A DNA stretch of 64,000 nucleotides, taken from Selaginella moellendorffii (taxonomy: Eukaryota; Plantae; Lycopodiophyta). A program made the position numbers and the translations under genes. The stretch covers positions 429,402-493,401 of the forward strand of contig NW_003314294.1 in the NCBI RefSeq assembly GCF_000143415.4, in the 5' to 3' direction. Under the pieces are notes generated by a model, which was not told the DNA's origin, ran no database searches, and worked only from the letters and a program-made list of their open reading frames with translations. Below, in pieces: positions 4,927 to 64,000 of this stretch (positions are counted from its first letter, which is position 1; each line of letters starts with the position of its first letter).

Positions 4927-4987
4927 ATGGCAAACTAAAAATTTATATAAATAGATATATAGTTTTTCTTATTTCTTATTTGTAATA

Positions 4988-8752: not shown

Positions 8753-8863
8753 TGGGATGTAAGAGAAGCATGTTTGTGATGTTTTCAAGGTGTTGGATTA
8801 ATTGTAAGAAGTTAGTTTAAAGTTGAAGCCATCAAAGTACGTGTTTGGGTCTAAACACACAAC

Positions 8864-34024: not shown

Positions 34025-34100
34025 AGCAACAAAACCCTAAACCTCTCGTTGTGGTAGAGCCCTAAAAAAGTAGAGTGGAAACGGAGGGGAGGAAGCGGCT

Positions 34101-42600: not shown

Positions 42601-43375
42601 AATTTTCTTAAGCAAATTAAAAATCTTAAATAAAAATTGTGGTTAATATCACAAGGTTTTATAAAAATATTTATTTTTTTTAAACACTTTTTAAATAATA
42701 AAATTTTATAGGTATATAATTTTACATTGCATGAAGTGATAGCATGTTATAATAATATAAACAATATAAAAATAAATTATTATTTTTATTTTTAAGTTTT
42801 TTTGGATTTTTTATTGTATGTACAATTAATATACCTACACCAATGTTTTAAACTATTTATAATAAATCTCAAATATCAAACTTTCCAACAATTTTTTACC
42901 TATTTATTTACCTTAACATAATAAAGCTTTTTTAACTATATTTTTATGTTATTTTTAATTATAAATAAATAAAAATATTTTATATACCATAAAATACTGA
43001 TATTTTTACTTTTATTTATTTTTATACCTAAATGTTTTTTACTGAATTTTTATTTTTATTTTTAAGTGATACATTAAAAGTAATAAAATAAGTGCTAAAT
43101 ATTCACTAGGTAAAGTAAAAGAAGATTAAAAAGAAAAAGTGCCATATTTAATTCTAGAAATATTTATTCTAATAAGTAGAACAAAATATTTATGTTTTTT
43201 TTATTATTTAAAGCAAGTAAAATTTTACTTTTCTTTCCAAAAAGAATAATATTTTTTTTATTAGATAAATGTTTTTTTTTCCCTTCTTCTATCTGTCATC
43301 ATTTTTTATTTCAAAGTTTTCTATCATTTGATAGATTCATTTTGTCTACTATATCTTTTTTCCTTGTCGATGGAA
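39620..43375. other. AT-rich island, probably decayed transposon sequence
   Basis: Abrupt compositional shift with no credible ORF; element family not recognisable. Confidence 0.5.
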
Positions 43376-43600
43376 TTTGACGAAGTACAGGTGTTGGTGA
43401 CCAAACAGCGTGTATGTTTATTCTATTGCTAACGTGGCGGAGTCCTATCCGCTAATACTTTGCATGGGTAAATCGACGGTCCAGATGCTATCTAGAACCG
43501 ACGGCATTGGCGAGGCGCTTGCATTGTCGAAGGTCATAGATTGGAGGGCTCGCTAGGAAGGAGGAGCTTGGGCGAAGGAGAGAGCTCCCGTTTCTTGGAT

Positions 43601-45899: not shown

Positions 45900-47890
45900 T
45901 GTGATCACCTCCCTTTATATAATTAGCTTTTTTTTGGTTTCCTCTAAATCTTTGTTACACTCTAGCATAGATTCTCCTACTATAACTCTTAAGGAATATT
46001 TTCACATCTCTATATCACACCTTAAACACTCAAAACACAACTTTAATTATTTCTATGGTTTGGATGGTATAATGACAAAATGGGAACTATGGCCCAAGGA
46101 GGAGAATTAGGAGGCTAGCCCAAAGAAGACATCACAACCACTACACTATAAGATTATTTAAAAATGTTATATGATCAAATAGACTACTAGAGATGTGTCT
46201 TTATATATTAAGGTGTACATAAAGTCTAAGTTAATAAAAATCAATGGATGCTCATAAATCCAAATTTATAATAGCTACAAAATCTTCACAGACAAGTGAC
46301 TCTTTAAAAGTAGAGCAAATATAAAAAAGGATGACCAAAACCAAGGCTGCCTCTTTCATATAAATAGTAAATATATTGTGAATATATATGTGACTGTTGG
46401 CCCTACCTTGACTTGGATTTGTTTCACATCAAATACATTCAAGTTCATAGAGGTCATATTGTAAGATTTAATCCTCAAGTTAGCTTTGGTTTCAATTTGA
46501 ACGAAACATTACTTCCTTGCTCAAATTGATCCTCTTTGGAAGCTTTATTAGCTCCTCTTATAATATGAAAAATAACATTTAGATGACCATAATGGAAATG
46601 TGATATAAGTTATATATCTCCTAAAAGGTAAATATGTACTTTATAGTAATAATATTTATTGTACAGAATATATAATTGTATGAGTTATTTTTACACCAAT
46701 TTTTTGTTTACTTAAGAAAAACCTGTAGGTGGACTTGGATGGTAGTGGAAATACCTTATAATTTATAAACTTTCCTAAACACTTCCTAGTATATTCTTTT
46801 TTATTTTACCATGTAATGGTTAATATGCAATAATATTAATATTGATTTATAAATTATAAACATGTTTATAATTATTGATCAATTGGATTATTCAAAAATA
46901 CTAAATAAGAATGACACTACTATTAAGTAAACAGGTTGCTGCATGCAATGTGAAGCAAATTTTTTCCTTTCTAATGTTGATTTCTTAATATTAGTGTATC
47001 TATTATTTATTAATACAATTGATTAAATGGAATTAAACCTGTTTGTAATTTATAAACACAAAATTAGTCTTCAATTATTAGATAATAAATTTAATTACAA
47101 TGTGAGTGCTCAAGATATAGGAATAGATATATTAATTAGGGTTTAGATCCCTACTTATATACAAGAAAGGATGGACTAAATTCAATCCCAAATGGATATT
47201 ATAGTATTATAATTAATATATTATCTAGCCAAGTAATACATGTATATACATGTATATATTTACAAATTTTATACCATCTTTCCTTCCAAAAAATGAAAAA
47301 GGTGATGGCAATAAGTCAGGTGAAACATCTGGAGCATTTGCTAGGCAACTATAAACTATTACAAGAATTTGAAACTTTTACAAAATCATTAATAAAGTTG
47401 TTAACAACCATAACTAAAACAAAACCCAAAGTCATGATATAAGCATTAATCTACTATAAAATCCCGATAAAATAATTAATTTGATGAGGAAATCTTTACA
47501 TATTTATTCCAAGGATATATAAATTTATCCCATATTGGGTAAAATCATTAGCTAAAAAGACAACTTCTAAATTAAAATAATTATGCAAAATTAATGCACA
47601 AACACAATGAGTACATATTCCACCCACTAACAGGATATAAAAGACCCTAAATCAAACTCTAGAGCATGCAATATTAATTTAGACACATAAACTACCTTAG
47701 ATTGCCAAAGAAAACAAAAAAGAGCATTCCACTATGCTTGAATTCTTGTTTTGAAAATTTTATTGATGTGTTATTATCCGCATGTTATGTTTTGAGCATA
47801 TTTTTAATTCCATCATTGTAAGTATTTTTTTTTTTTCACCATCATATACTGCTAGCTCAACTTCAAATTCTCTTACAAATAATACGTGGG
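45900..47890. other. AT-rich island, probably decayed transposon sequence
   Basis: Compositional shift, no credible ORF. Confidence 0.45.
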
Positions 47891-47932
47891 TTTTTAGGTC
47901 AAGAAGAAAGAAAATCGTTTGAGGATTTTTCT

Positions 47933-49116
47933 ATGGCAAGTAGCAGTGCTCTATCGGCAGCAGCGACGCTCACAAAATCCGCCAATTCCTTCGCCTCCAG
48001 CAGCAGCTCCAGCTCCGCCTCCGCCCCCTCCAGGAAATCCGGGAGCTTCAAATGCGGTACGCGATTCTTCGCCTCCATTCCCTTCACCAAAACATTGACA
48101 GATTTTGGGTCGCAGGGATGAGAATCCGGGCCGAGAGCGACGGCAGCAAAGGATCTACGACAAAATCTCCCCCACCGGTGGAATTGGAGCGCTCCCCGGC
48201 CGATAAGCTCGTGGATGGAATGTCGTTCGGCCAGCTGTGCGATGAATTTCAGTGCATAAGCAGCCCCTCCGTGGAATCTACGTGCCGTCAGCTCGCGAGA
48301 GATATCCTGGAAATTCGAGATGGGAATAGAGCTCTGGGAACTCTGGCCTACTTTGTCAAATACAAGGTAAGCTCTTCCTTCTTTTTCTTTACACGACTAG
48401 TTAGATCTCTTCTCTCTTTTCTAGGATCCATTGAGGTCTTTCCAAGGACGATTGAAGTACAATAGGCCGTCGTGGACGAGAACTGCCTTGGAGAATCCAA
48501 CAGTGGTACGTACGTGATTGGTTTCTTTGCTTGCGAGCTTTTCATATTCATGCAGTGGTGCTTTGGCGGTGGTTCCATTTGCCTCCTCAGGCAGTGCGTC
48601 AAATGGAGATGGTGTCGACGAGCGTGCTACGAATCCAGTGGACGATACAAGGAAGGCCAAAACTTGCTGCTGCTTCCTTCGTTGGCGATGTTCTTGTCAA
48701 CGTAACGTCGACTTTCACTCTCAACCAGATCAGTGGCCAGGTTCTGGAGCACCGAGAGGAGTGGGACCTCTCCGGCAACTCTCCTCTGGCTCAGGCATAC
48801 TTTTGGCTCTCCAGGATTGCGTACTCCACAGTCGAAGCTGGCAAGGATACGTCGGAGTTAGTCCAAGGGGTATCCAAGGTTATTGACAAGAACTTGGGCG
48901 ATGACAGCAGCATTTACGTCGATCCAACCGATCCAAAGAAGGTCTGGTTGTTTCTCTTTTCTCATAGAAATAGTTTATATCGATCTTCACGACTTGGCAA
49001 ATTGCCGTTTGCAGTTCTTCCAAGTGGATGATAATCGCCAAAAGGACATTTACCAAGTTGGCCTGGTGCTTGCGCTGCTCTACCTCCTTGTCCAGTTCTT
49101 AAAACTCACGCTTTGA
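47933..49116 (+). CDS. Conserved chloroplast protein, DUF2358/NTF2-like with C-terminal TM, 5 exons
   Basis: Ser-rich transit peptide; DKLVDGMSFGQLCDEFQCISSPSVESTCRQLARDILEIR, YKDPLRSFQG..Y, FTLNQISGQVLEHREEWDLS, FFQVDD..LALLYLLVQFLKLTL. Confidence 0.85.
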
Positions 49117-49888: not shown

Positions 49889-50410
49889 TAGAAGTAATTT
49901 GGCTTTTTTGGTAGAACACCAGCAAAAACATTGTGAGAGCTCTGATATAATAGTTTATAAAAAGGGGTAGAAGTTTTAAGGCTTTGCCATTTCATTATAC
50001 TTAGTGGGAGATAAAAAATGGTCGTTTCATACTTGCCAACAGTTATGTATGCTAAAAATTGGCAATGACTGGAAAATATTCATAAGGTATTCTCCCTCTT
50101 ATGCATGGATCAATGATTATTTGAAAGATGAAGTGAAGGATGTTACTTTATAATGTGGCCAGCAACAAGTTCAACATGATAATAAATATTATTTGATCCA
50201 ACCTTTCCTGCTTAGCTGTATGTTTAAATAAAGTTCAGAGGTGTGTTTTAAGTCAGTAGTAATGCTGACATTTGTGTAAGATGCGGTGCTTTTTACCTCC
50301 TAGATTATAGCAGTTAAAAGCACTGAAGGGTTTATAAAAAAGCAATAAGAAGATTCGTACCAAGTGTGAATATGTCACATGAGTATAGACAAACTTTTAA
50401 TTTCTATCTG

Positions 50411-50458
50411 AACATGAATTCTGACTTAGAGGCGTTCAATCATAATCCCACACATGGT
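50411..50458 (-). pseudogene. Short 25S/26S rRNA fragment
   Basis: ATTCTGACTTAGAGGCGTTCAATCATAATCC is the reverse complement of the conserved LSU 3'-domain sequence GGATTATGACTGAACGCCTCTAAGTCAGAAT with one mismatch. Confidence 0.85.
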
Positions 50459-52189
50459 GCATATACTAAACATGACCCAAGATTTTCATTAACATGAATG
50501 GTATATCTTAAGGAATAGAGCTCTGAGGTGGCCATTGCTGGCTTGTCTTGTAGAGCATTGTAAGATAGTTTCCACATCTATACGATTGAAGAGGCCTAAA
50601 AAATGTAGTGACAATTTTGTATCAAATTTAAGAATTAAACTACATAATCTTTTTTGCACCAGTTATTCCAAATGCTTAGGTATGTTAAGCTAGACAGCAG
50701 CTTTCTTGACAAGCTCTTGCTCAAGAGGAGCCATCTAAAGAGGATTCACACTTCAAATTCTTTTTCAATCTCTTTAGGCAATTCTTCCATTGCACTAGCA
50801 GACAGAGCAAATCTTAACTGTCTTAACCTCTTGGCATCACAATCATGCAAGAATTGCCTTCAACATTGTATACCACCTTGATATTATAGGCAAATAGACC
50901 TTTAAAGTCTCCATTGATATTATGATAATTTGTTGCACTATCTATTATGAGTCACGACCTAATATAGATGAATGGAATACATATCTTGACCTCTATGCCC
51001 TCAATTGCTATGTTAGTATAATTACCTTCTAAAATCTTGATGGATATTTTATTTATTGCTATAAATTTGAGCATATTTAAAGAAGCATTGGTTGGAAGTA
51101 ATGCTTGTCAAAAGAAATTTGCACTCACAATTGAGTTTGAAGCATTTGTGTTCTATATGAACCATGGATGAGAATTCTAATCTCAAATGAATGTTCAAAG
51201 TTAATTATCTTGAAAATAAAAGCATTTAAAGTTCATTTAATTAGGAATAGATTATGTAAAAAAATCCATGACAAATCTTATATCTATTCCTATGATCATA
51301 TTTTTTCTTGCTGCCACTTATAATTTTGAATATAAAATACATGTAGAAATGAATTTCTAGATGATTACATACTATAGTGGTTAAAAAAGTGGTAGAAATT
51401 AATTAAAAATTTTAAAAATTTCATTATGTAAATCAACTATTTTTTGTAGCACCTACTACTTGCAAGGCATTTTCTCTATCCCTTGAAAGTTCATTCATTT
51501 TGTGCCTTTGAGCTTTGAAAACCCTTGCAACTAACCTGGCCTCCTCCATCGTAGTACAGGAATATTCGGCTGTTGGTAAGAAATTAAAATTCTGCAACTA
51601 ATTTTAAATCTTAAGAGCACACTTCACTCTCCTCTACACACTGGAAATATTAAAATAGCACAGCAGCAGTTCTCAATGTTATTGAGGTACCACATTTGAG
51701 GTATCTCATGAAGGTTAAGGTCCACAATTGATACAATACAATGAATTGTTTTAGTATCAATTGGTTGACAATTGATTTGGAATGTTTATATTCTCAAACA
51801 ACAAAATGAATTTTCTTTTGGATTCAAATTTCTTGAAATTGTTCTCTAAGACAACTTATTCATTAAGGGAAGAGAAAAGCTGGATGCCAGGAATATTCTC
51901 TTCCCCAGAATGGCATTGCATGAGACTACAGCCCTAATAATACATCACTGGTATATTTAATAGATCTCGTATACCACAATCACACCATTACAACAAGACA
52001 AACTTTCAAAACAAGATGAGCCCTGCAGTGAAGGGGGAGAAAGTGTGAATGAAAGATAGCTATATTAGAATTTTGTTATGTATTTTGCTAGCTAGCAGAT
52101 TAGATATTGCCATAGCAGTTGTCAATGTTAGATTAGAAGAAACACAGGTTTGCAACTTGTAGTACATATTGGTTTATGGTAAAAGGTTA

Positions 52190-52302
52190 TTTCTTCTCAC
52201 AAGAACATGACATAGCCAACTTATTTTCTATTTTCGATCATGCAAGGCAACCTTGCATGATCGAAAAATAAGTTGGCTATGTCATGTTCTTGTAAGAAGA
52301 AA
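52190..52302. repeat. Near-perfect ~52-bp-arm inverted repeat (hairpin) with a 3-nt loop
   Basis: ACAAGAACATGACATAGCCAACTTATTT..TTCGATCATGCAAGG-CAA-CCTTGCATGATCGAA-AAATAAGTTGGCTATGTCATGTTCTTGT; one 6-nt bulge. Confidence 0.95.
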
Positions 52303-53169
52303 ACTACTGTAGCATTATCCAATATAATGTTAACAAGAAACAATTTAGCTGCAACATTTCACTCCTATTTTTATCTATAAGCAATGATTGAGCTATCTTG
52401 CACAACGCAGTTGTCAATGTTAGCATGTTTATGCAGAGTTATAGAAGAAAATATTGGCTTGCAGTTTGGCACGTCCTTAAGTATCCTGAGAAATAGCTGA
52501 TCTTGGTATGGTTTATCATAATATGAGGTAAAAGGCTATAACCTTGGAGGAAATCTAAATGGATCATATCTCCTTTTTTCCAGTCCTCCAGCTAGTCAGC
52601 CATGCTTCAAAATTCATTCATCATCTCCTCTGGCATTGCCAATGGCTGCTTCTGGAGGCACGTTGTAGCTGATTTGGAGCAGCCACTCGCCGCTCCCGAA
52701 ACCATCTCGTGCTTCCTGGATTCTTTGCAATGAGCCACAAACAAGAGGCCAGGTTGTATAGGCTGACGATTCCACTGTTATAACTGCCATTGCTAGCTTC
52801 TATTGCTATGAACATGACCAGAATTAAAAGTTGAAAGGTCATTGTCTAGAGTAGGAAATGTGATAAAAGTACTCACAGATTAATTTTTAAACTTCTGAAC
52901 TAAGAAACTTTCAGGTTCCATAATCACTTTCCCATGTTTGTGTTACCTCATCCACAGGAAAAGATCGCCAATACCAGTAACTTCGGCTTTGAGCCATTGA
53001 CAAAAGTACGTGATTTCTCGGCGATAGCATGATCCAGAATAACAGTTGAACCTCCAATGCTTTCCTGAATGCGGAAGTAACTCTCATCCAAGACATTGAT
53101 AGTGAACTCCATATGATTCATCCTTTGACACCTTAAATTAGCACATATGATAAGAAATAAAGAAAGATC

Positions 53170-54540
53170 GTACCTCATCAAGTATCTCAGCAAAAGTTTG
53201 ACCCCAGGCTCAATCAGCTTGACTTTTTCCTATCCAATTTCTAAACCATTAACTGTAGGAGGCTTTTCCAAACGAATCAAGGGAAGTGCATGGGAGCGAG
53301 ATATGGTTATCCTCTCTCCAATCCTTGCAACCTTGATAGTCATAACATCAAGGACGCTCAAGGCGCACACACAAATCTCCTCCATTCTCAACTCCAGAGA
53401 CTTCAAATGCTCCACAGCCATTGAGACAGCATTCTCAGCGTCCTCGTTGAGCTGAATCGCGAGGAGAACTCTATGCTAATCACCCAGGGAGAAGCTTTTG
53501 CAGCGTTTCCAGTGACCCAACAGTTGCTCAGGCCATCATCTAGAGGCAGTTCCGAAGAGAAACGGCTTCCAAGCCTTTGATAATAGGTCTCACACGTATC
53601 GAAGCTGATGTTGTCCCAGTCGGCTAGGACCAGCACAAACTTGGCAAGCTCCAAGAACGCTTGCATGTCCGGCTCCAAGAGGTCTTCGACGGTATGGTGT
53701 GCCAAAACCACACGCGCTTCAAGTGTTGCTGCCGGAAAGGTCACGTATGCAGGATGGATTAGAGCGCCAGTTAAAGCCTCATACAGCAGCCTCAAGAGCA
53801 TGGCAATCTCAACTCAGAGTAAGAAGGGCCAAACGATTGGCCAGAAAGAAATGGACCTTTTCAAAACACTCATGGAGTTGATATTCCAGACTTCATGACC
53901 ACAGCTGCTCAACTTTAGATCCACCGTCTCCTGCAGAACTTGGCGCCAAGAAGGACCATCCCTGCTGGCAAGAGCAATCCATTCCGGAGGGGCATCCGGG
54001 TAGGCTATCCAGTTGCATGGGATGTTTCCCATGTCAAAGGACACAGCGTTGTGGCACATGTTGATGGTGAAGCTGGCCATGTCAAGATCGATGACATAAG
54101 TGTATTCCATAGGGAATATTGCCTGAGGAGCATACAAGGACTTGGAAGTGCACAAGAGAAAGCCAAGCTCGAGGATACGGTACCAGAGCTTCAAAGGTCC
54201 ATTGGCGACAAGATCTTTAGGTTTGCACCAAGGTTTGTCAAGATTACCAAGTTCTCTCCATATCTCCTGCGAGCCAGTGGGCAGCGCAAGTTTTGTCCAG
54301 GAATTCCGTTGATGGAAACTCCTGGTACTCAAACTGGGGAACAAAAGGGTTACAACAAAGAAATACCACTGTATGATCAATCTGGAGTTTCAAGAGCTGG
54401 ACACCAGGATCATCCTTGAGAAATCTGACGATCTTTCTGCCACTCTCCAAGTTACAGTTCCCATGATTGCAGATGCAGTTGTGGCGGAAGCTGACGTGCA
54501 TGCTTTCTCAAACGGCCACCTTTTGATAAGTAATAGCCAT
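53170..54540 (-). pseudogene. Frameshifted gene of unknown family (EYTYVIDLD motif)
   Basis: Consecutive protein-like minus-strand ORFs in different frames (54244-54501, 53814-54380, 53403-53801, 53230-53421) separated by frameshifts and stops. Confidence 0.55.
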
Positions 54541-54574
54541 TTTATTAAGGAAAAACTACGGAGCCTTGAAAGGA

Positions 54575-56308
54575 TTAGCTAAAACCTTGATAGGCCTTTT
54601 GGACGAGCTGTACATCCGTTTGCTTGTTGAGCCCATTTGCCGGATGAAGAACTGGAAACCTCTCATCCCGCTGCTGCTGGATCACGACTTCCGGCATTCC
54701 AATCCCAACGAAAGCTGGCCTGTTCTCCTGCTGCTGATGGAAGTGCTGCGGCTCGGAGCGATCGCTAAACTGCCTGTGTACCTGAGGATGGTGAGCAGTG
54801 GCAGTGGCAACCGCTGGAATCTCCACGGCCTGTTGCAGCATTGGAGTCGACACCGGTCGAGGGATCGCGTGCTGCTCCAGGAGTTTCCTGTGAAGAGCGT
54901 CACTGCTGGGAGCGTAGAATTGATGCCCAAGAGTAGCAGCGGCTACTGCTGGAGGGCGAGCCAAAGCCTCCAGTCCCATTGGAACAAGCCGCTGAGGCAA
55001 CCCGTTCGTCTTGTGCACGTCTAGCAGCTCGCCTCTCGGGATGTGCTGAACGAGTAGCTTCTCTTGAGGCCTCTCCGCCACCTTGAGCTTCTCGAAGTCC
55101 GAGAGAGTGGCGTCCAAAGCTCTCCTGTCCATGGCGTCTGCGCTCTCCCCAGAGTCTCGTCGATCCATAGCCAGCGAGCTCATGTCGGTTAGCTGGCTGC
55201 TGCTTTGCGACGACACGGAGTCCGAGTGCTCGTCCTCCACGGAGTACTGCCTGATCACCATTCCCTTGGGCAGTATACCCCGTGAAACCTCCACCAGAGG
55301 CACGTAAGTCGACGATGGCACCACGGCTCTCGACGCTGCCATCACCTGAGGCACTACTGATCGAGCAGCCACTACTTGCGGAACCAGAACTGGTGATGCT
55401 GCCTGAGCTCCGGGAACAAGTGAGGGAGTCCCGGGCGCGTAAATTCGAGGGGGCGTCACGGCTGCTGTCAAGTTCTTGGTTGGAACTGTGACGAGGTTCA
55501 CTGGAACGGATGGTGGCAAAACCTGGGGTGATACTACTGGTGGCACAACGCTTGGAATCAGAGGTGACGCTGCCGCTGGAGCTAGAGCTTGGGCTGGAGA
55601 TGCTGCTGCTGGAGCTAGAGCTTGAACTGGAGTTGGGGCTGGAGATGCTGCTGCCGGGGCTGGAGGAACTGGAGCTTGAACTGGAGCTGGGACTGGAGCT
55701 GGGACGACTTGAGGTAGAACCGCAGGAGGAACTGCTACAACTTGCGGTCCTGCCATAGGCATGGCTGGACTTTGCTGTGCTACTAGAGGTGGCGCCGCCT
55801 TGTCGACCAAAACCACAGGTTTTTTGTGCTGCTCCTCCAAAACCACGTTGGCCTTCCTATAAACTCCATTCACAGCCTCGACGAACTTGTGCTCCGGATC
55901 GGCAGCGTTCTCGTGACTCGGTGGCTGCTTCACGGACACCGGAAAGAGAAAGAGCCTCAGCCTCGAGGATGAATCCTTGGATTCCATCCTGTCATACTCC
56001 TCCATCATGTTCTCCAGATCCTCCTCCGAGATCACCGAGACCAGCGCGTCCAAATCTTCGTTTGGCAGCTGGTACTTGAGGATAAAACTCTCGTATGGAC
56101 AGATCTTCCGGAGCTTCGTCATGAGATCGATCACCGAGTCGCCCCTGTGAACCGAGAGAATTCTCGTCTCACCACCCACGTAGCGGAGCTGGGAGTCGTG
56201 CGGGCGAGGCATGATTCGACCACCATAGCTGCACAGGAATTTGGCGCGTCCCGTGAGCGAATCCTCCGACTTGACGGATCCCTGGTCCTCTGCAAAGGCC
56301 GCACACAT
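54575..56308 (-). CDS. PB1 (octicosapeptide/Phox/Bem1p, plant UP2-type) domain protein with a Pro/Ala/Val-rich tail
   Basis: KFLCSYGGRIMPRPHDSQLRYVGGETRI..LKYQLPNEDLDALVSV..EDLENMMEEYDR..RLRLFLF; first ATG at 56308 after a probable 5'UTR intron; internal APAAASP repeats. Confidence 0.92.
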   Translation of the reverse strand: MCAAFAEDQGSVKSEDSLTGRAKFLCSYGGRIMPRPHDSQLRYVGGETRILSVHRGDSVIDLMTKLRKICPYESFILKYQLPNEDLDALVSVISEEDLENMMEEYDRMESKDSSSRLRLFLFPVSVKQPPSHENAADPEHKFVEAVNGVYRKANVVLEEQHKKPVVLVDKAAPPLVAQQSPAMPMAGPQVVAVPPAVLPQVVPAPVPAPVQAPVPPAPAAASPAPTPVQALAPAAASPAQALAPAAASPLIPSVVPPVVSPQVLPPSVPVNLVTVPTKNLTAAVTPPRIYAPGTPSLVPGAQAASPVLVPQVVAARSVVPQVMAASRAVVPSSTYVPLVEVSRGILPKGMVIRQYSVEDEHSDSVSSQSSSQLTDMSSLAMDRRDSGESADAMDRRALDATLSDFEKLKVAERPQEKLLVQHIPRGELLDVHKTNGLPQRLVPMGLEALARPPAVAAATLGHQFYAPSSDALHRKLLEQHAIPRPVSTPMLQQAVEIPAVATATAHHPQVHRQFSDRSEPQHFHQQQENRPAFVGIGMPEVVIQQQRDERFPVLHPANGLNKQTDVQLVQKAYQGFS

Positions 56309-56718
56309 GATTGAAAGCTCCTGGAGGGACAAAGGAAAAAGCTCGCTTTCAACACTGTACACTTTAAAGAGAAAAAAAATTCCCAACTTACTCAAAGCCT
56401 TTCGAATCTTTGTCTTTCCGTTGCCTCCATCGCTAGATCGCGCCGCCAAGCTCACAAAAGCCCCATTCCCGCGCGCTTCCCAGGCAAGGATCAATCTAGG
56501 TCAAAAATGCACCTGAGAGAATCTAAGCGCCGGAGCAGTCGATCCAAATCACATACCCAAAACGCTCCCCGTGAGCGCCAAGAAATCAGGGCTCTCCAAA
56601 ACCGCCATAGCTTGACCTCCAAAATGTGCCAATGACATGGGCCACGATCTTTTCCCACGTTTACCCTACTTTTCTGACGCGTTTACCTCGCTATGCCTAG
56701 CCACCTATAGCCGGTTAG

Positions 56719-56997
56719 CCCGCCACTATTCAAACTACCGGTCACGATCTCCTCGAACCTGGACGCTCCAGATCTCTTTCCTGTCAGGGGATATGGCGCT
56801 GCCCAATGGGAGGCCAACGCGTGTTCTCCAATGGACCAACGACATTGACCATATTGACCGAGAGTTGACAAACAAGCTGACCAAGACGAATATTACCGCG
56901 CCACGCCATTTACAAATCCACCGGTCACGATCTCCCCGCACCTGGACGCTTCAGATCTCTTCCTTGGCGATATGGCGCTAGCCAATGGGAGGCCACC
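56719..56997. repeat. ~95-bp direct duplication with CCAAT boxes in the divergent PB1/PSAG promoter
   Basis: ACCGGTCACGATCTCC..ACCTGGACGCT.CAGATCTCTT..GATATGGCGCT..CCAATGGGAGGCCA at ~56719-56818 and ~56900-56997. Confidence 0.9.
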
Positions 56998-57200
56998 ATT
57001 TTGGATTGCACCACCCACACCACTGGGTTGCTAAGCTGACTATCTCGCTTAGCTTAGCAGCTTAATCAAATCCCAGTAGTGACTACTTTCCCTTGTCACT
57101 GTAGCTAGAGTTCCAGAGCTCTTCCTCATCTTCTCGTCCAAAACTCCAGATTTTTGTTCTTCGCGAGAGCTTGGAGATTTTCTCCAGAGGAAGAGGATCC

Positions 57201-57698
57201 ATGGCTTCTACTTGCGCAGCAGCGTCTTCTTCCTGCATCGTCGCGGGGCTTCCCAGCATCAAGAGCTCGAGCAGCAAGAGATCTGTGGTCGGTTTCTCTG
57301 GATTCCGAGTCGCCAACAAGCTCGACGGCCTCTCAGCAGCAGCTCGGTGCTCCAGTTTCGAGAGCAAGACGGGCTTCGCGAGATCTATGGCTCGGACCAC
57401 CTGCCTGGAGGCGCCGATCATCATCAGCCTGTGCACTGCTGCGTCGCTCGCCATGGGACGGTTTGTGTTCCTTCCTTTCCAGAGAGAGCAGATTGCCAAG
57501 GCCGGGTTGCCGCTCCAAAACGGTGTAAGTCACTACGAGGCCGGAGACACCCGGGCTCAGGAGTTTGTGAGCTTGCTCAAGACGAACGATCCCGCTGGCT
57601 TTAACATCGTCGATGTGCTCTCCTGGGGATCCATTGGTCATATTATTGCCTACTGGATCCTGGCAACTTCAAGCAATGGTTATGATCCTCAATTCTAG
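57201..57698 (+). CDS. PSAG: Photosystem I subunit V (PsaG), intronless
   Basis: IISLCTAASLAMGRFVFLPFQRE..LP.QNG.SHYEAGDTRAQE..LLKTNDPAGFNIVDVLSWGSIGHIIAY..LATSSNGYDP. Confidence 0.97.
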   Translation: MASTCAAASSSCIVAGLPSIKSSSSKRSVVGFSGFRVANKLDGLSAAARCSSFESKTGFARSMARTTCLEAPIIISLCTAASLAMGRFVFLPFQREQIAKAGLPLQNGVSHYEAGDTRAQEFVSLLKTNDPAGFNIVDVLSWGSIGHIIAYWILATSSNGYDPQF

Positions 57699-57923
57699 AG
57701 AGAACTGAAGTATATAAACTCACCGAACTTCAATGGAAAATCGAGGAGTGTTTCTTGTGTATACAGCTCCTGGAAATCCCTTCTCCCGAGTTCTTGTTTC
57801 ATACAGTTCTTCAGGAGCTGCAAGAACGAAAGAAAAAAAAAACATATTTTTACCACGTAATGTAAATATGATCGTGCAATATCCTGGAAATGCGTACCTC
57901 TAATTGATTTTTACTCGGTAAAT

Positions 57924-59283
57924 CTACACAGGGGGTGCCGGGAAGTCGTATAAAATCCACAGGCCCGAGCAAGAGTTGGACTCCAGGGAAGGCTGGATTG
58001 CAAGAAAATGCAATCCTCCCGCAGCTTTTTTTGCAGACTCCCATAAGTCGGCTTCCTCGTCGGCCTGCTTGCTTTTCTTGTAGTAAGAGTAGAACCATTG
58101 CCGAGAAGCTCCAGATAACAGGACCAAGGCCGAGTTTTTCTTGTCCACGGAGAGAGACGCAAGCTCCAAGGAATTCGTCCAGGCTGTGGGAAAAAAGTCA
58201 TTTTTCTTCTTGGGAAGTTTGTATAGAGCACTTACCAGCTAGAGCTAGATCTCTCGAGGATGCAACAGCAACGCCTGGTATTAGAGTGTCAGGAGAAGGA
58301 AGCTCCGTAAGCATGTCAAGCGAGACCTCTCCAAAGTTGGAGCCTTTTTCCACCAGTTTAATTTCTTCTTGAAGCGCTGCAAGCAAATGACATAGCTCAG
58401 CTCTAGTTACGAACAAAGACACCAGAACTTCACCTTGGAATGAAAGCTGAACAAACGCCCACTTCTCGCCTCGATAGTTTGGAGGGACTTCTTTAGGAAC
58501 GTTTACACCCATTGACAGTATACTCGGAGCATTCTCCTGAAATCCTGGATGTTGGCGGTAGACTTGATCGTAGCGCTCGTGCAGCCATCTTACAAGAGCT
58601 GTGCACTGCAAAGTAATGCATGAAGATACACACCTAGATAAAAAAACTTTACATACCCTCTGGCTCGAAGTCACTTGGATGCCGAGCTCTCCACAAGCCT
58701 TTGAGATTATAGTTTTCACTTGAGATCTGCATGAATTACATAAAAAGCCGCGCAAGAAAATAGAAATGAACTAATACCTGAAGTAGCGAACTCTCGTAGG
58801 CCGTGGTAAATCAAAGGTCTCTATAACTTCCGCTATGGCATTCTTTAACGTTGTGCTGTTGATAACATTACTGGGATAGAACCTTGCGAATTCCAGCTGC
58901 CTCTTTGCGTCACAAATAATCAATTCCCACATCCTCTTCCCCCGATCATCGAAGATAGGCCGTGAGCAAAAGTCGAGCTGCCACTCCACAATGGAGGCCA
59001 AATCTGCACCTTCCAGAACTCGTCCATCTACCTGAGCACCTTCGCCTTCTTCGTTTCCTTTCTCTTCATTTCCCTTTTCTTCATCTAACGAAGAAATGCT
59101 GCTAGCCAAATCTTCACTAACTACACTGCTCGAGCCTTCGACGGCGCATTTCCAAACAGTCCGAGAGTTCTTTAGCCTGCCTAGTCCTGTATGTAACTGG
59201 GCACCTTTAGACGGCTGGGGCGTTCTCCAGGAAACTCTACTAGTAGTGAGGAATCCACAAGGCACGAAGAGCGCCATAGCCAT
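57924..59283 (-). CDS. ATAB2: Chloroplast RNA-binding protein TAB2/ATAB2 (DUF1092), multi-exon
   Basis: EWQLDFCSRPIFDDRGKRMWEL, NVINS..LK, RYFRSQ, GEKWAFVQL, PGVAVASSR, WESAKKAAGGLHFLAIQ. Confidence 0.95.
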
Positions 59284-59408
59284 TGCCCTACGGAAGAATC
59301 AGTTGTTCCTCCTAATATTCAGATTAGAGAAAATGGAGAGAACAAAAATCTGGAAACAGATGTCATCAGACCTTAGAAGATTTTCGTGTTCATTTAAGGA
59401 GGAAGAAG

Positions 59409-60897
59409 TTAACAGGTTGGCATGACAACTTCTAGCCTTCGTCTGTTTCTGTCGAACTGTGCTCTCGCATTCTTGAAATCCACAGGGTGTGCCGTTTGTA
59501 CCTGCGTGCTAAACTCTCATCTTATTCAAAGCCAACATGAACACGAAAAGCTTACCTTGAGCTTATACTTTTCAGGGACGTACAAAGAGACATCGGAATT
59601 CGTCACCTCCAGCTCCACCTCGCTCGAAGTTTGCTGGAGACCAACGATACATGGTAAAGCTTATCAATGCTGAATAAAGAGATGCTTACCACTTCTGGCA
59701 AGTCAACTCGCAACACAATCATCTTCGGTTTTTGATTGCCATTTGGTAGAACAGCCTTATCTGTCCTGAAAAAACGCACATTTTTTTCTCTGAAAGCATT
59801 GTAAGTACCTTCGGAATAGCAGCCAGGAGTTACAAACATACCAGAATTTCCCAAGGTCCAAATCATCTCGGTAGATGAATTCGTAAGAAGGCTTCACTTC
59901 TTTGGAGGCAAGTTCCTTCACGTCTGGCACTGAATCACTTGAAGGTTTCTCTCCTGCTCTTGACTTGGAAGAAACCTCTTTTTCTGTGTTTGCTTGCTCA
60001 CTTGCCGATGTCTTGCGAACTGTTTGCATCTTAGGATTTCCAGAATGTCCTTTATACTTCAGCTTGGGCAGGATAAATTCTGGGAATGGAGGTTAGAATA
60101 AGAAAGAATATAGAAACACTTATCTGGTCTACCTTCACTAAGCTCTACGCCCCGTTGTTTTTGAATGTTCTCAATTGCTGTCTCTGCTAGAAACCGCTTA
60201 AACCGATTGTTTTTCATGGCACGCTCATGAGCTTCTTCGTTCACTACAAAATCATAAACCTCACACTCCCCGCCGGCTGAGAGAAAACATACGCTTCAAC
60301 AACAAAGGAGAAAAGAAAATTCGAGCAAGCAAACCTTTATCCACGTCGTTTCGTGCAGGACCCAAGCTGTAAGGGATCGACCACTGTTCGCCTTTTCCAG
60401 AATGAGTGAAAGAAGTCGGTTTGTCAATGTTGGTTGTATGGCATATGTTGATGAAAACCTGAGAAGGAAAACTATAGCGACCAACAAAAGAAAGGAAAAG
60501 AAGAAACGCAACCTTCTTATTGTTCTTCTTGTTCTTCGTTTTGACACAAAATCCAGCAACCGGTATGATCAAGTCCTTTCCTTCCATTGAAAAACTGCTG
60601 CGCTCTTCGGCCATTTTGAGGTATGCCTCAGCTTCCTGGCAAACACAGCCATTTTCTCTAAGCTGCAAGAAAAAGAAAATCCATGTCAACTTACTTCCTT
60701 GCTGCCAGGCTGCGAGATCTCCTTCGCATACTCGCTCAAGAGCTCCATAAACTTGGGATCTTTCATACATGTCTTCAGCCTCGAGAATTCCTGTAGAGAA
60801 ATCAAAGCCACAGTGATTTCCAGCCCAGGGCCTTGCTCGATCGGCGAAGACTAACATCGGAGCTGAGATTCATGTCGCGTAGCACTTGCTCCGCCAT
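59409..60897 (-). CDS. DNAAF2: Kintoun/PF13 (DNAAF2) axonemal dynein assembly factor, PIH1 + CS domains, multi-exon
   Basis: N-terminal LSSDEFSRLKTCMKDPKFMELLSEYAKEISQP, P.AGFCVKT, VFINIC, WSIPYSLGPARNDVDK, VYDFVV, PSYEFIYR..DL, IVLRVDLP, ARAQFD..RLEVVMP. Confidence 0.8.
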
Positions 60898-60990
60898 GCC
60901 CACGAGCCCTAAATCCCAGTTAGGGCAGACAAAAGATCTCAGCCGTCGACATTGGCGCGAAAGATTTAAACATTTAAAAAAACAAAAGAT

Positions 60991-61491
60991 TTAATATGGA
61001 TAATCCGAGACGCCAAGCATGGCACTGAGCGTGAGATAGACGAGATAGAGCCCGCCCACGATCACAATCACCGCTAAAACTCCAGTCACTGGATTGCTGA
61101 GAAGATCAAAGATGGGCTTGAAGATGGAATAGAGCCCTCCAGTCGCCACCGTCAAGAAATAGATCCCATATCTCCTCATGTTATCCCAGAATTCCTCCAG
61201 CAATGGCCCCTCCGGCCCCATCGCCAAATCTCCCAAATTTCTCCCATCTGTGGAGCCGTGAAGATCGATCGCTGCGTGCGCGGCGTCTGGATGCGTGTGG
61301 GAAAGAACACCATAGCCAATTCCAAGCGCTGCTGCTAGATACAGCGCTGTGGGCTTGAAGATCTCCTTTTGCGCTGGAATTTCTGGCCGTGAGCTTGATT
61401 TGATAGAACCCAATGAACGCGATTTGATTCTTTTCGCTCGCAACGCTGGAATTTGAGCGCAAAATGGAGATATTGATAGAGAAAACGCCAT
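60991..61491 (-). CDS. Ycf33 (DUF751) family chloroplast membrane protein, intronless
   Basis: Transit peptide then MGPEGPLLEEFWDNMRRYGIYFLTVATGGLY..KPI..LL.NPVT..LTLSAMLG. Confidence 0.9.
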   Translation of the reverse strand: MAFSLSISPFCAQIPALRAKRIKSRSLGSIKSSSRPEIPAQKEIFKPTALYLAAALGIGYGVLSHTHPDAAHAAIDLHGSTDGRNLGDLAMGPEGPLLEEFWDNMRRYGIYFLTVATGGLYSIFKPIFDLLSNPVTGVLAVIVIVGGLYLVYLTLSAMLGVSDYPY

Positions 61492-61541
61492 AGTAGCCAC
61501 TAAGAACCCTACAATGCGTATGAAGAGCTCTGTTTTAGGGT

Positions 61542-61940
61542 TTATGAGAAGTAGCCATAGCCATCGTCGTCTTCCGTGAGCACACTCAGATTGAGTACCT
61601 GCTTCTCGCCGATCCACATCGCATGCGCCGTGTGATCTCGCAGAGGGTTTCCAGTGTTGGGATGGATCAACACCGAGAAATTCCGCCGGTTGAGAGGGAT
61701 CCAGGTCACAAACTCCACGAAATCTTCGTGCTTCATGAGATTTACCTCGAAATTCCCAATTCCATGAGGGCCAATTGGCTTGTCCCACACCTTGATCTTG
61801 AATTGGGGGAATTTGCCGCGTATCTCGTCCTGGAGCTCCCTGGCCTGGCGCAGCTGGGCCTGATCCGTCTGGAAGAAATAGACGTGGACGTCGTAGGATC
61901 GAACACGGAAAGGGAAATTCGGTGTCTTTGCCATGATCAT
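61542..61940 (-). CDS. DOPA 4,5-dioxygenase-family protein (fungal/bacterial DodA type, not plant LigB type), intronless
   Basis: YDVHVYF, WDKPIGPH, FEVNL, W..LNR..FSVLIHPNTG..RDH..HAMWIGE..LNLSVL; start at ATG 61940 or 61934. Confidence 0.88.
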   Translation of the reverse strand: MIMAKTPNFPFRVRSYDVHVYFFQTDQAQLRQARELQDEIRGKFPQFKIKVWDKPIGPHGIGNFEVNLMKHEDFVEFVTWIPLNRRNFSVLIHPNTGNPLRDHTAHAMWIGEKQVLNLSVLTEDDDGYGYFS

Positions 61941-61977
61941 CAAACCCTAGCGAAGAACAGGGAGCTCCTTTGCTCTT

Positions 61978-63086
61978 ATGGCTCTTGTCCACGCCTTGAA
62001 TTCGCGGTTCCTGGCGCCCAATCGAAGAATCGAGCGCCACCCATTTGCATTCGCGCCTAGAATCCTTGGAAATTCGCCTCGCCGGGTATTAGCCCTCTGC
62101 GATCGATGCCTAGCTCACCACTGTGGTTTTTCTTTGGGCAGGCGAACAAGGATCGCGTCGCATGCCCTCGATCTTCCGCAGAGGAGACGAAGCCCAAGAC
62201 AGTGTTCGTCGCCGGCGCGAATGGCAAAACCGGGAAGCGCATCGTGAGCAAGCTGCTAGCGGATGGATTCAAGGTCCGCGCCGGTGTCCTGGATGTTGCC
62301 AAGGCTCGGTCCAATCTACCCAGCAGCCCCAACATCGAAATTGTGTGAGATCTTCATCCATTTCTTTCTTCCACTCCATTTCTCCGCCATAGCCAAAGCT
62401 CGCCTCGTTTGTTCTTCCTTGTCTCAGATCCCGGCTGACGTGACCCAAGGGACAAATCCACTGGCAACTTCGATTGGAGACGCGGATGCGGTGATTTGCG
62501 CTACTGGATTTCGCTACTCTCTCGATGTCCTGGCTCCCTGGAAGGTAGATTCTTTCCGGATCTCGACTCGATCGATCATACATTCTTTCTCCTCAGGTGG
62601 ACTATCGAGGAACCCTAAACCTCGTGGAAGCGTGCCGCAAGAATGGGATCAAGAGATTCGTGCTCATAAGCTCCATTCTCGTGAATGGCGCCGCGTGGGG
62701 GCAGGCGCTCAATCCAGCCTATCTGGTGCTCAATGCGTTTGGTCTCACGCTCATCGCCAAGCTCCAGGCCGAGAACTATGTGAGAAGCTCTGGGATCAAC
62801 TACACGATCATCCGGCCTGGGGGCCTCTCGGAGGAGAAACCGGATGGAAACAAGAAGATCGTCATGGCAAAGCAGGCAAGGCATTTCTCTCCTTTGATTC
62901 TTTGAGAAATTGACGATTTGATCGCAGGATACGCTCTCGTCCGGATCGATTTCGCGAGATCTTGTCGCTGACGTTGCTGTGGAGTCGATCGATTGCGACG
63001 ATGCGAGCTTCAAAGTAGTGGAAATCGTGGCGGAGCCTGGCGCCCAAAAACAGAGCATCGCAGAGCTCTTTGCCCTAATTTCATAA
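61978..63086 (+). CDS. Chloroplast NAD(P)-binding Rossmann-fold protein (atypical SDR, TIC62/flavin-reductase-like), 5 exons
   Basis: VFVAGANGKTGKRIV, DAVICATGF, VDYRGTLNLVEAC, LISSILVNGAAWGQALNPAY, AKLQAENY..YTIIRPGGL, GSISRDLVA. Confidence 0.93.
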
Positions 63087-63144
63087 TCCTGGTGGGCCGG
63101 CCGAAGAAATCTAGGGCGCGGCATCTTGATATTGTCTCTAAGCG

Positions 63145-64000
63145 ATGAGCGCCGATCTAGTGTCCAAGCTGCGCGCGGCGCTTCTCCACCACCAGGTTCG
63201 TCTCGATCCAGTGCCGCAGCGCCAGCACGTCGAGGATCCCAACGATCCCACGCTCGCTTACATTTCCCGGATGCTTCTGGACGAGGAGGAGGAGGAGGAG
63301 GAGGAGCCGCCGCAGATGATCCAGCTCCAGGATCCCTACAAGAATCTCATCGCGGAGCTCGCCGCTCTGGTGTCTTCGCCCGGCGGCAGTGGGAATCTCA
63401 TCCATCCAGACGATTGTGGAAATATTTCGGTGCCAGACGTCCACGAATCCAGGACGGGGTTCCTGAAATCGATGCTCCTGGAAGCGGCTCGAGCGGTGGC
63501 GGGGAATCGTGGCTCCGAGGTCTACAGGATCATCAGCGAGGTGAGGAGCCTGGCATCGCCAGGGGGCAGCAGTGAAGAACGCACGGCCTTGTTCTTCGCG
63601 GATGCCTTGATTGCGCGCTTCACAGGGTTTGGGCCACAGGTATACAGTGCCATGGTGAAGGGGATCCGAGAGAGGCACTCTGTCCACGTCCGGCTGCTCA
63701 ATCTCCCATCCTTCAGGGTCACCCAGCGATTTGCCAACGGCACCATTCTAGACTTTTGCCAAGGAGCTACGAGAATTCACATCGTCGACTATGGGATCCA
63801 CTATGGCTGCCAGTGGCCCCAGCTCATCCAGAGGCTCTCGCAGCGACCAGAGGGACCGCCGGCGATGAAGATCACAGGGATCGACTTTCCTCGCGTGGAC
63901 GTCAAGGAGACAGAGAGAAACCTCGTGGAGTATGCCAAGAGCTGTGGAATCTCGCTCGAGTTTGAGGTGATCACGAGCACGTCCTGGGAATTGGTCCAGC
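63145..64000 (+). CDS. GRAS transcription factor, LISCL/SCL14-like, runs off the window end
   Basis: LAYISRMLLDE N-terminal motif, ASPGG..ERTALFFADALIAR, FANGTI..IHIVDYGIHYGCQWPQLIQRLSQRPEGPPAMKITGIDFP. Confidence 0.93.
   Translation, partial: MSADLVSKLRAALLHHQVRLDPVPQRQHVEDPNDPTLAYISRMLLDEEEEEEEEPPQMIQLQDPYKNLIAELAALVSSPGGSGNLIHPDDCGNISVPDVHESRTGFLKSMLLEAARAVAGNRGSEVYRIISEVRSLASPGGSSEERTALFFADALIARFTGFGPQVYSAMVKGIRERHSVHVRLLNLPSFRVTQRFANGTILDFCQGATRIHIVDYGIHYGCQWPQLIQRLSQRPEGPPAMKITGIDFPRVDVKETERNLVEYAKSCGISLEFEVITSTSWELVQ

What the first reader, a model, noticed from the sequence alone, without database searches (positions are those of the whole stretch)
57924..64000. Operon-like divergent gene array with 37-125 bp between coding sequences
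From a 37-bp hub (61941-61977) four genes run leftward head-to-tail: DOPA dioxygenase, 50 bp, Ycf33, 93 bp, kintoun, 125 bp, TAB2. At least two run rightward: NAD(P)-binding protein, 58 bp, GRAS. These gaps cannot hold a normal 3'UTR, terminator, promoter and 5'UTR. Either polycistronic mRNAs (known in green algae) or promoters and polyA sites embedded in neighbouring CDS must be used. Telobox-like AAACCCTA motifs lie in the hub and in the dioxygenase-Ycf33 gap.
Basis: partly seen in the sequence, partly recalled or inferred. Interest (0 to 1): 0.75.

Follow-up and report, generated by a model that had tools for sequence, protein, structure and literature searches.

The report
Tightly packed spikemoss genes, separate promoters
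Seven nuclear genes of the spikemoss Selaginella moellendorffii really are only 37-125 bases apart, but nearly every tiny spacer carries a known plant promoter motif (the telo-box) just before the next start codon, so this looks like extreme packing of separate, overlapping genes and not an operon.

Summary
The window is Selaginella moellendorffii scaffold GL377598.1. Pfam and the public CDS calls of both haplotypes give the same genes and the same CDS-to-CDS gaps: Tab2 <125- PIH1/kintoun-like <93- Ycf33 <50- DOPA-dioxygenase <37 hub> NAD(P)-binding -58> GRAS. PsaG converges on Tab2, 225 bp away.

The operon reading is not favoured.
- The telo-box core (CCCTA/TAGGG) occurs 7 times in the 363 bp of spacers, against 0.3-0.4 expected (P<=5e-5). 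Each copy lies within 50 nt upstream of a start codon. Six neighbouring genes with wide spacers have none.
- The upstream ORFs are not depleted of AUGs (observed/expected 0.93-1.21), unlike green-algal polycistrons.
- The spacers show no RNA structure beyond shuffles and contain no ncRNA.
- The gene order is not seen in the Diphasiastrum, Riccia or Calypogeia loci I could fetch.

Best reading: each gene has its own promoter, and UTRs are very short or lie inside the neighbouring gene. The DOPA and NAD transcripts have no 3'-end-like sequence before the next gene and probably run into it.

No RNA data could be reached, so transcript structure is inferred. The scan reported the same packing and telo-box pattern on other DNA of this genome (s1-349007, s1-410784).

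The parts
57201..57698 (+). PsaG (photosystem I subunit), single exon; converges on Tab2 across 225 bp
   Evidence: Pfam PSI_PSAK, E 1.9e-23. Public CDS call in both haplotypes.
57924..59283 (-). Tab2/ATAB2-like RNA-binding protein gene, about 4 short introns, 382 aa in the public call
   Evidence: Pfam Tab2-like_N and Tab2-like_C on separate exons. CDS call. Exon sketch.
59284..59408 (-). 125-bp spacer from the PIH1 stop to the Tab2 ATG. The first 100 nt are 62-68% AT, followed by a pyrimidine-rich patch and TAGGG at -7. That TAGGG is absent in the other haplotype.
59409..60897 (-). PIH1-domain (kintoun/DNAAF2-like) gene, about 8 introns. The public call is 341 aa in the other haplotype. The alternative 356-aa call in this haplotype ends at 59299.
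   Evidence: Pfam PIH1. PIH1 and PIH1_CS on the public products. Exon sketch.
60898..60990 (-). 93-bp spacer from the Ycf33 stop to the PIH1 ATG. A U-rich first half (66% AT) is followed by an inverted telo-box pair, GCCCTAA-7 nt-TTAGGGC, at 60906-60926.
60991..61491 (-). Ycf33 (DUF751) gene, single exon, 166 aa, with a transit-peptide-like N-terminus. Not called in the public annotation of this haplotype.
   Evidence: Pfam DUF751, E 2.5e-21. 99% identical to XP_024525504.1 of the other haplotype. 9 synonymous and 2 non-synonymous differences.
61492..61541 (-). 50-bp spacer from the DOPA stop to the Ycf33 ATG. An exact telo-box at 61536-61543 overlaps the stop codon, and a second core in inverse orientation lies at 61507-61511. 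There is no AT-rich 3'-end-like sequence.
61542..61940 (-). DOPA 4,5-dioxygenase-family gene, single exon, 132 aa (130 aa from the second ATG at 61934, which the public call uses)
   Evidence: Pfam DOPA_dioxygen, E 7.7e-37, over the full profile. Exact match to the public CDS.
61941..61977 (.). 37-bp head-to-head hub between the DOPA and NAD start codons, with an exact telo-box at 61942-61949 (+) and pyrimidine-rich patches on both strands
   Evidence: One substitution between haplotypes.
61978..63086 (+). NAD(P)-binding Rossmann-fold protein gene, 287 aa, 5 exons. Introns at 62086-62141, 62343-62427, 62545-62596 and 62876-62927; the last has a GC-AG boundary.
   Evidence: Pfam NAD_binding_10. 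Public CDS of 287 aa in both haplotypes. Introns read from the sequence: the exon lengths add up to 288 codons.
63087..63144 (+). 58-bp GC-rich spacer from the NAD stop to the GRAS ATG. It holds a site II motif, TGGGCC, at 63093-63098 and TAGGG at 63112-63116. There is no 3'-end-like sequence.
   Evidence: The spacer is kept in the recent duplicate.
63145..64000 (+). GRAS (scarecrow-like) gene, single exon, 476 aa. It runs past the window end to position 64575 in window numbering.
   Evidence: Pfam GRAS, E 8.1e-40. Full ORF in L004 15945-17375.

Best explanation
This is a gene island in the compact nuclear genome of Selaginella moellendorffii. Seven unrelated genes have been squeezed together, but each remains its own RNA polymerase II transcription unit.

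Nearly every tiny spacer carries a telo-box-type proximal promoter element (CCCTA core, in two cases the exact AAACCCTA) 7-50 nt upstream of the next start codon. Transcription therefore most likely starts in the spacer or in the last bases of the upstream gene, giving very short leaders.

Inferred 3' ends:
- PIH1 and Ycf33 probably end in the AT/U-rich first half of their spacers, which gives a bipartite 'terminator half, promoter half' layout.
- DOPA-dioxygenase and the NAD-binding gene have no such sequence before the next CDS. Their transcripts probably extend into or through Ycf33 and GRAS as overlapping, read-through-shaped RNAs.

Each downstream protein would be made from its own capped mRNA and not from a shared one. 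At the 37-bp hub the two divergent genes probably have overlapping 5' ends.

Shown here: the gene identities, the gaps, the motif enrichment, the lack of AUG depletion and the lack of synteny. Inferred: the positions of transcription start sites and poly(A) sites, and the role of the motif.
For: - The gaps and genes are reproduced by Pfam and by the public CDS calls in two haplotypes.
- CCCTA/TAGGG occurs 7 times in the 363 bp of spacers against a mean of 0.26-0.42 for random interval sets of the same sizes (P<=5e-5).
- 7 of the 10 occurrences in 57000-64000 are in the spacers, each within 50 nt of an ATG.
- 0 of 6 nearby genes with wide or unrelated upstream regions have the core within 80 nt of their ATG.
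- The motifs are conserved in the other haplotype for PIH1, Ycf33, DOPA/NAD and GRAS.
- In Arabidopsis and rice, telo-boxes sit mainly in 5' flanks and 5' UTRs and pair with site II motifs (PMC3022908). TGGGCC lies at -52 of GRAS.
- AUGs in the upstream ORFs are at expectation: 8 against 6.6, 9 against 9.7, 14 against 13.6. Several are in strong context.
- The sequence after the PIH1 and Ycf33 stops is AT-rich. The sequence after the DOPA and NAD stops is not.
- In Arabidopsis read-through bicistronic RNAs, second ORFs are rarely translated (PMC9768141).
Against: - No RNA evidence of any kind was reachable. The collection holds no RNA-derived contig for PsaG, DOPA, Ycf33 or GRAS.
- The Tab2 motif is only a 5-mer and is lost in the other haplotype.
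- A neighbouring tight pair with a 108-bp gap has no telo-box core.
- The genes are not the translation-apparatus genes for which telo-box promoters were defined.
- The motif test was framed after the motifs had been seen.
- Spacer divergence between haplotypes is no lower than in CDS, so there is no sign of extra constraint.
Confidence: 0.65

Rival explanations
1. True polycistronic expression as in green algae. One promoter at the hub drives DOPA-Ycf33-PIH1-Tab2 leftward and NAD-GRAS rightward, and the downstream ORFs are translated from the shared mRNA by leaky scanning or reinitiation.
For: Same-strand ORFs lie 50-125 nt apart, shorter than the algal medians of 212-260 nt (PMC7896298). No 3'-end-like sequence follows the DOPA and NAD stops.
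Against: There is no AUG depletion ahead of the downstream ORFs, and 8-14 AUGs, several in strong context, would have to be bypassed. The upstream ORFs are 130-340 codons long, too long for efficient reinitiation (established knowledge). Promoter-type motifs sit before each downstream ATG. There is no structured inter-ORF element. The order is not conserved in Diphasiastrum, Riccia or Calypogeia.
Confidence: 0.07
2. Read-through is the main product. Long multi-gene primary transcripts are made and then cut into monocistronic mRNAs, or they coexist with them as NMD-prone by-products, as for Arabidopsis read-through transcripts.
For: The Arabidopsis precedent (PMC9768141). The DOPA>Ycf33 and NAD>GRAS spacers lack poly(A)-signal-like sequence. 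Other notes of this scan report RNA running across close neighbours elsewhere in this genome (s1-421272, s1-420806; not checked here).
Against: No mechanism for cutting and re-capping is known in plants. No tRNA or ncRNA punctuation was found. The telo-box enrichment points to separate initiation.
Confidence: 0.15
3. Partly a modelling artefact. Some starts are mis-placed, so some gaps are larger than stated: the hub would be 165 bp if NAD starts at 62106, and the Ycf33>PIH1 gap about 225 bp if PIH1 starts at the internal Met of exon 2.
For: Both of these starts rest on predicted short first exons. The two haplotype annotations disagree on the PIH1 3' end and on whether Ycf33 is called at all.
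Against: The 50-, 58- and 125-bp gaps are bounded by plain ORFs with in-frame upstream stops. NAD exon 1 gives a transit-peptide-like N-terminus, as expected for a plastid protein, and both haplotype annotations use it. From memory, not tested here: the first exon of PIH1 continues the N-terminal motif of kintoun.
Confidence: 0.1
4. Some of the packed genes are silent relics, so they need no signals of their own.
For: The GRAS allele of the other haplotype carries a stop. Ycf33 is not annotated in this haplotype.
Against: Ycf33 and DOPA show mostly synonymous differences between haplotypes (9:2 and 5:2) and match their Pfam profiles over the full length. All reading frames are intact in this haplotype.
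Confidence: 0.03

Closest known systems
Telo-box (AAACCCTA) proximal promoters of plants, often paired with site II motifs (Gaspin et al. 2010, PMC3022908)
   Same: The motif is the same. It lies just upstream of the start codon, in or near the 5' UTR. A site II motif precedes it at GRAS. It can be used to flag cryptic Pol II promoters.
   Different: The genes here are not ribosome or translation genes. Several copies carry only the CCCTA(A/G) core. Three junctions carry an inverted pair. The promoter must share 50-125 bp with the end of the upstream gene.
Green-algal polycistronic loci (Gallaher et al. 2021, PMC7896298; leaky scanning, PMC11892635)
   Same: Co-oriented ORFs with very short inter-ORF distances in a member of the green lineage.
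   Different: There is no AUG depletion and no weak-then-strong Kozak pattern. The upstream ORFs are long. Promoter motifs sit before each ORF. The order is not conserved in the species checked. No shared transcript has been shown.
Arabidopsis read-through (bicistronic-shaped) transcripts suppressed by NMD (Kurihara et al. 2022, PMC9768141)
   Same: A likely fate of the DOPA and NAD transcripts, which lack a 3'-end signal before the next gene. The second ORF would not be translated from such an RNA.
   Different: In Arabidopsis these are minor by-products of normally spaced genes. Here the spacing itself would make overlap the rule.
Compact Selaginella gene islands (S. lepidophylla: 1.1 kb mean intergenic distance in gene-rich regions, PMC5750206)
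   Same: Same genus-level architecture of tight, unmethylated gene islands separated by repeat-rich blocks. Low-GC blocks flank this island.
   Different: The gaps here are about ten times shorter than that mean and come five in a row.

Membership tests
Green-algal-type polycistronic locus | Co-oriented ORFs with a short inter-ORF distance (medians 212-260 nt) | tested here: met
   Gaps of 50, 93, 125 and 58 nt
Green-algal-type polycistronic locus | AUG depletion in ORF 1 and the inter-ORF region, with a weak start context at ORF 1 | tested here: not met
   AUG observed/expected is 1.21, 0.93 and 1.03. Several internal AUGs have -3R and +4G. The second DOPA start is in strong context.
Green-algal-type polycistronic locus | A single promoter and a single poly(A) site, with full-length reads spanning all ORFs | not testable with these tools
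   No RNA-derived contigs for these genes in the collections
Green-algal-type polycistronic locus | Colinearity conserved across distant species | tested here: not met
   DOPA stands alone within 20 kb in Diphasiastrum. Ycf33 has other or no neighbours in Riccia and Calypogeia. Other Selaginella species could not be examined.
Telo-box promoter | AAACCCTA, or its core, in the 5' flank or 5' UTR close to the start codon | tested here: met
   Exact 8-mer at -50 of Ycf33 and -36 of NAD. Cores within 50 nt of the PIH1, GRAS, DOPA and Tab2 ATGs. Enrichment P<=5e-5.
Telo-box promoter | Upstream partner motif (site II TGGGCY or a TEF box) | tested here: inconclusive
   TGGGCC only at -52 of GRAS. GTGGGC abuts the PIH1 ATG. 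None was found for Ycf33, NAD or Tab2.
Telo-box promoter | The motif actually drives or positions transcription (TRB binding, start site nearby) | not testable with these tools
   Needs start-site data, reporter assays or TRB binding data
Bidirectional (head-to-head) promoter | Divergent genes whose starts lie less than 1 kb apart and share a promoter region | tested here: met
   37 bp between the DOPA and NAD start codons (43 bp from the second DOPA ATG) in both haplotypes. This depends on the NAD exon-1 model.

The most novel reading that the evidence does not exclude
The telo-box could be a two-in-one punctuation mark. Three co-oriented junctions carry inverted pairs of the core, bracketing or following the upstream stop codon. 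If a Myb-type TRB protein bound there, it could stall and terminate the incoming polymerase (roadblock termination, as yeast Reb1 and Tbf1 do) and also set the start site of the next gene. That would let a land plant run separate genes 50 bp apart without conventional terminators.
Probability: 0.12. Interest if true: 0.7.

Novelty: new member of a known kind. Interest (0 to 1): 0.38.

Why it matters
It shows how far a land-plant nuclear genome can compress gene spacing: five junctions in a row of 37-125 bp. It also points to a short, recognisable motif as the likely promoter core in such spacers.

That gives a concrete test case for how Pol II termination and initiation coexist within about 50 bp. 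It also warns annotators of this genome that UTRs and CDS of neighbouring genes will overlap, and that small genes such as Ycf33 get dropped.

It does not provide evidence for operons in land plants.

Tried and rejected
- **RNA evidence.** Exact-protein look-ups for DOPA (both start choices, both haplotypes), Ycf33 (both haplotypes), PsaG and GRAS returned only the genome assembly and no RNA-derived contigs. The only transcript-like contig found (L007, another species) carries DOPA-dioxygenase alone, followed by about 580 nt with no match to the other genes of this array.
- **Synteny.** None in Diphasiastrum, Riccia or Calypogeia.
- **Spacer constraint between haplotypes.** Divergence is like that of CDS, so this is uninformative.
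- **The NAD+GRAS tandem duplicate as a test of constraint.** It is too recent, at 97.5% identity.
- **RNA structure in the spacers.** Not better than shuffles, z from -1.46 to +0.63.
- **Rfam and tRNA scans.** Nothing found.
- **Gene calls for the first 47 kb of the window.** The look-up of a 340-aa ORF failed, so there is no window-wide gap distribution.
- **Literature.** No paper was found on polycistronic or read-through nuclear transcripts in Selaginella.
- **Intron solver.** My ad-hoc solver gave ambiguous internal exons for Tab2 and PIH1. Only the first and last exons are used in the argument.
- **Joined spliced proteins.** These were not sent to any search tool. Exons were searched separately by reference, and joined CDS were made only inside scripts, for counting.


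Full report
**What is there**

The window is nuclear DNA of the lycophyte Selaginella moellendorffii, on scaffold GL377598.1 of GCA_000143415.2. The 130-aa DOPA-dioxygenase ORF matches a public CDS on that scaffold exactly. The homologous stretch of scaffold GL377570.1 is 96.5% identical and represents the second haplotype.

- PsaG, 57201-57698 (+)
- Tab2, 57924-59283 (-)
- a PIH1-domain gene, kintoun/DNAAF2-like, 59409-60897 (-)
- Ycf33/DUF751, 60991-61491 (-)
- a DOPA 4,5-dioxygenase-family gene, 61542-61940 (-)
- an NAD(P)-binding Rossmann protein, 61978-63086 (+)
- a GRAS gene from 63145 (+), which ends 575 bp beyond the window

The public CDS calls of the two haplotypes give CDS-to-CDS gaps of 225 (convergent), 125, 93/94, 50, 37/43 and 58 bp.

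**How solid the gaps are**
- The 50-, 125- and 58-bp gaps are bounded by plain ORF ends and by first ATGs with in-frame stops upstream.
- The 37-bp hub depends on a predicted 56-nt GT-AG intron (62086-62141). This intron joins a 36-codon, transit-peptide-like first exon to the Rossmann exon. Without it the first in-frame ATG is at 62106 and the hub is 165 bp.
- The 93-bp gap depends on a 14-codon first exon of PIH1.
- The annotations are uneven. In this haplotype Ycf33 is not called at all, and PIH1 is modelled as 356 aa ending 15 bp before the Tab2 ATG. In the other haplotype PIH1 is 341 aa.
- Ycf33 and DOPA are real, constrained genes. Between haplotypes they differ at 9 synonymous and 2 non-synonymous codons, and at 5 and 2, respectively.

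**Local context**

Further calls on the same scaffold, near the window end and about 34 kb beyond it, are spaced 1-6 kb apart, apart from one 108-bp pair and the 59-bp spacer of the NAD+GRAS duplicate. Low-GC (25-35%) blocks separate the islands. This is therefore a locally extreme island and not a uniform property of the region. For comparison, gene-rich regions of S. lepidophylla average 1.1 kb of intergenic sequence (PMC5750206).

**Test of the promoter idea**

Writing out the spacers showed that each holds the core of the plant telomere motif close to the next ATG.
- In the 7 kb from 57000 to 64000, CCCTA/TAGGG occurs 10 times. Seven of these lie in the five spacers (363 bp), each within 50 nt upstream of a start codon.
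- Random sets of intervals of the same sizes hold 0.26-0.42 copies on average. In 20,000 draws per background, 7 or more copies turned up once against the 54000-64000 background and never against the other two (P<=5e-5). The stricter 6-mers give P<=0.0025.
- Two copies are the exact telo-box AAACCCTA. One overlaps the DOPA stop codon, 50 nt before the Ycf33 ATG. The other abuts the DOPA ATG, 36 nt before the NAD ATG.
- A site II motif (TGGGCC) lies 52 nt before the GRAS ATG.
- Six nearby genes with wide or unrelated upstream regions have no core within 80 nt of their ATG: two unnamed genes, PB1, PsaG, gene X and the truncated NAD copy.
- The motifs are kept in the second haplotype, except the weak one before Tab2.
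- The GRAS motifs are kept in the recent duplicate.

In Arabidopsis and rice the telo-box is concentrated in 5' flanks, mainly in the 5' UTR. It pairs with site II and has been proposed as a flag for cryptic Pol II promoters (PMC3022908). I take this as the main evidence that most of these genes start their own transcripts in or just before their spacer. The test was framed after I had seen the motifs, and binding or activity was not tested.

**Test of the algal polycistron idea**

Green-algal polycistrons are translated by leaky scanning. They show AUG depletion ahead of ORF 2 and a weak start context at ORF 1 (PMC7896298, PMC11892635).

| Upstream stretch | AUGs observed | AUGs expected |
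|---|---|---|
| DOPA CDS plus spacer | 8 | 6.6 |
| Ycf33 CDS plus spacer | 9 | 9.7 |
| NAD CDS plus spacer, last intron left in | 14 | 13.6 |

Several of these AUGs have -3 purine and +4 G. The other checks also go against this reading:
- The spacers fold no better than shuffled sequence.
- They contain no Rfam family or tRNA.
- DOPA-dioxygenase stands alone in Diphasiastrum.
- Ycf33 has unrelated or no close neighbours in Riccia and Calypogeia.

The sequence-level criteria for an algal-type polycistron are not met.

**Where the upstream genes might end**
- After the PIH1 and Ycf33 stops, the first 50-100 nt are 62-68% AT with U-runs, which is typical of plant 3' ends. The telo-box half of the spacer follows. 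These two spacers look bipartite.
- After the DOPA and NAD stops there is no such sequence. The 400 nt after the NAD stop are only 34-52% AT and hold no AAUAAA-like hexamer.

The DOPA and NAD transcripts therefore probably run into, or through, Ycf33 and GRAS. Such RNAs would be bicistronic in shape. By analogy with Arabidopsis read-through transcripts, the second ORF would rarely be translated from them and they would be prone to NMD (PMC9768141). This part is inference.

**What could not be done**

No RNA-derived contig for any of these genes is in the reachable collections, so start sites, poly(A) sites and read-through remain untested. Capped-RNA start-site data for this species are public (PMC11335568) and would settle the matter.

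Joined spliced protein models were not sent to any search tool. Exons were searched separately by reference, and joined CDS were made only inside scripts, for counting.

**Relation to earlier notes of this scan**

After I had formed the reading above, the notes showed that the same packing had been flagged repeatedly on other pieces of this genome. Two follow-ups reached the same telo-box and separate-promoter conclusion (s1-349007, s1-410784). Two others report RNA running across close neighbours (s1-421272, s1-420806), which I could not check. My motif test on this window is an independent repeat of the first claim.

**Verdict**

The finding is a real and striking example of gene packing. 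It is best explained as separate, abutting or overlapping transcription units with telo-box-type promoters, at a confidence of about 0.65. True operon-like expression is unlikely, at about 0.07.

One pattern remains unexplained. Three co-oriented junctions carry the core as an inverted pair, always with the sense copy first: at the DOPA stop, before the PIH1 ATG as a perfect 7-bp palindrome, and around the NAD stop. This leaves room for a terminator-plus-promoter role of the motif.

Noticed in passing
window 60991-61491 (-): The intact Ycf33/DUF751 gene is missing from the public gene calls of this haplotype (GL377598.1). It is called as XP_024525504.1 on the other haplotype.
   Followed up: yes
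L001 8249-8290 (other haplotype), equivalent to window about 63670-63700: The GRAS allele of the other haplotype carries an in-frame stop, so its public model is cut to 293 aa. The allele in the window is intact (476 aa).
   Followed up: partly
L002 1252-3641 (window numbering 68294-70683, beyond the window end); L010 10001-11599: The 3' part of the NAD gene (from about 62312), the spacer and GRAS are tandemly duplicated at 97.5% identity, with inverted GRAS fragments upstream of the copy. A third GRAS copy 34 kb away has a deleted NAD remnant fused upstream, and its public 532-aa model reads that remnant in the wrong frame. A fourth copy has an unrelated AT-rich upstream region.
   Followed up: partly
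window 57137-58085: A 949-bp tract covering the PsaG leader and CDS, the convergent spacer and the last Tab2 exon is 100% identical between the haplotypes. The surrounding 7.7 kb differs at 2.7% of positions, so about 26 differences would be expected here. Possible causes are gene conversion, a recent sweep or an assembly collapse.
   Followed up: partly
window 19030-19037 (+) and 34032-34039 (+): Two further exact telo-boxes lie between divergent ATG-started ORFs (ATGs 36-40 nt and 15-69 nt away). One of these ORFs has a transit-peptide-like start. They may be further head-to-head hubs.
   Followed up: partly
window 62876-62927 (+): The last intron of the NAD(P)-binding gene has a GC-AG boundary instead of GT-AG. 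With it, the exon lengths add up exactly to the public 287-aa product.
   Followed up: partly
window 57201-61491: Three photosystem-I-related genes lie within 4.3 kb: PsaG, the psaB translation factor Tab2, and Ycf33, which is linked to cyclic electron flow around PSI in cyanobacteria (from memory, not verified here). The NAD-binding protein also has a plastid-type N-terminus. This could be chance, and the order is not conserved in the other plants checked.
   Followed up: partly
window 60906-60926; 61507-61543; 63072-63116: Inverted pairs of the telo-box core sit at three co-oriented junctions, always with the sense copy first. One pair is a perfect 7-bp palindrome with a 7-nt loop. As RNA they are not more stable than shuffles.
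   Followed up: partly
window 4000-12000, 40000-44000, 46000-48000, 50000-52500: Blocks of 25-35% GC separate the 45-55% GC gene islands. They are presumably repeat or transposon-rich spacers.
   Followed up: no
window 61542-61940 (-); L006; L007: The intronless DOPA-dioxygenase-family gene has 54-60% identical homologues in Diphasiastrum complanatum and in a transcript-like contig of another species. It is therefore an ordinary gene of non-seed plants and not a recent transfer into Selaginella.
   Followed up: partly
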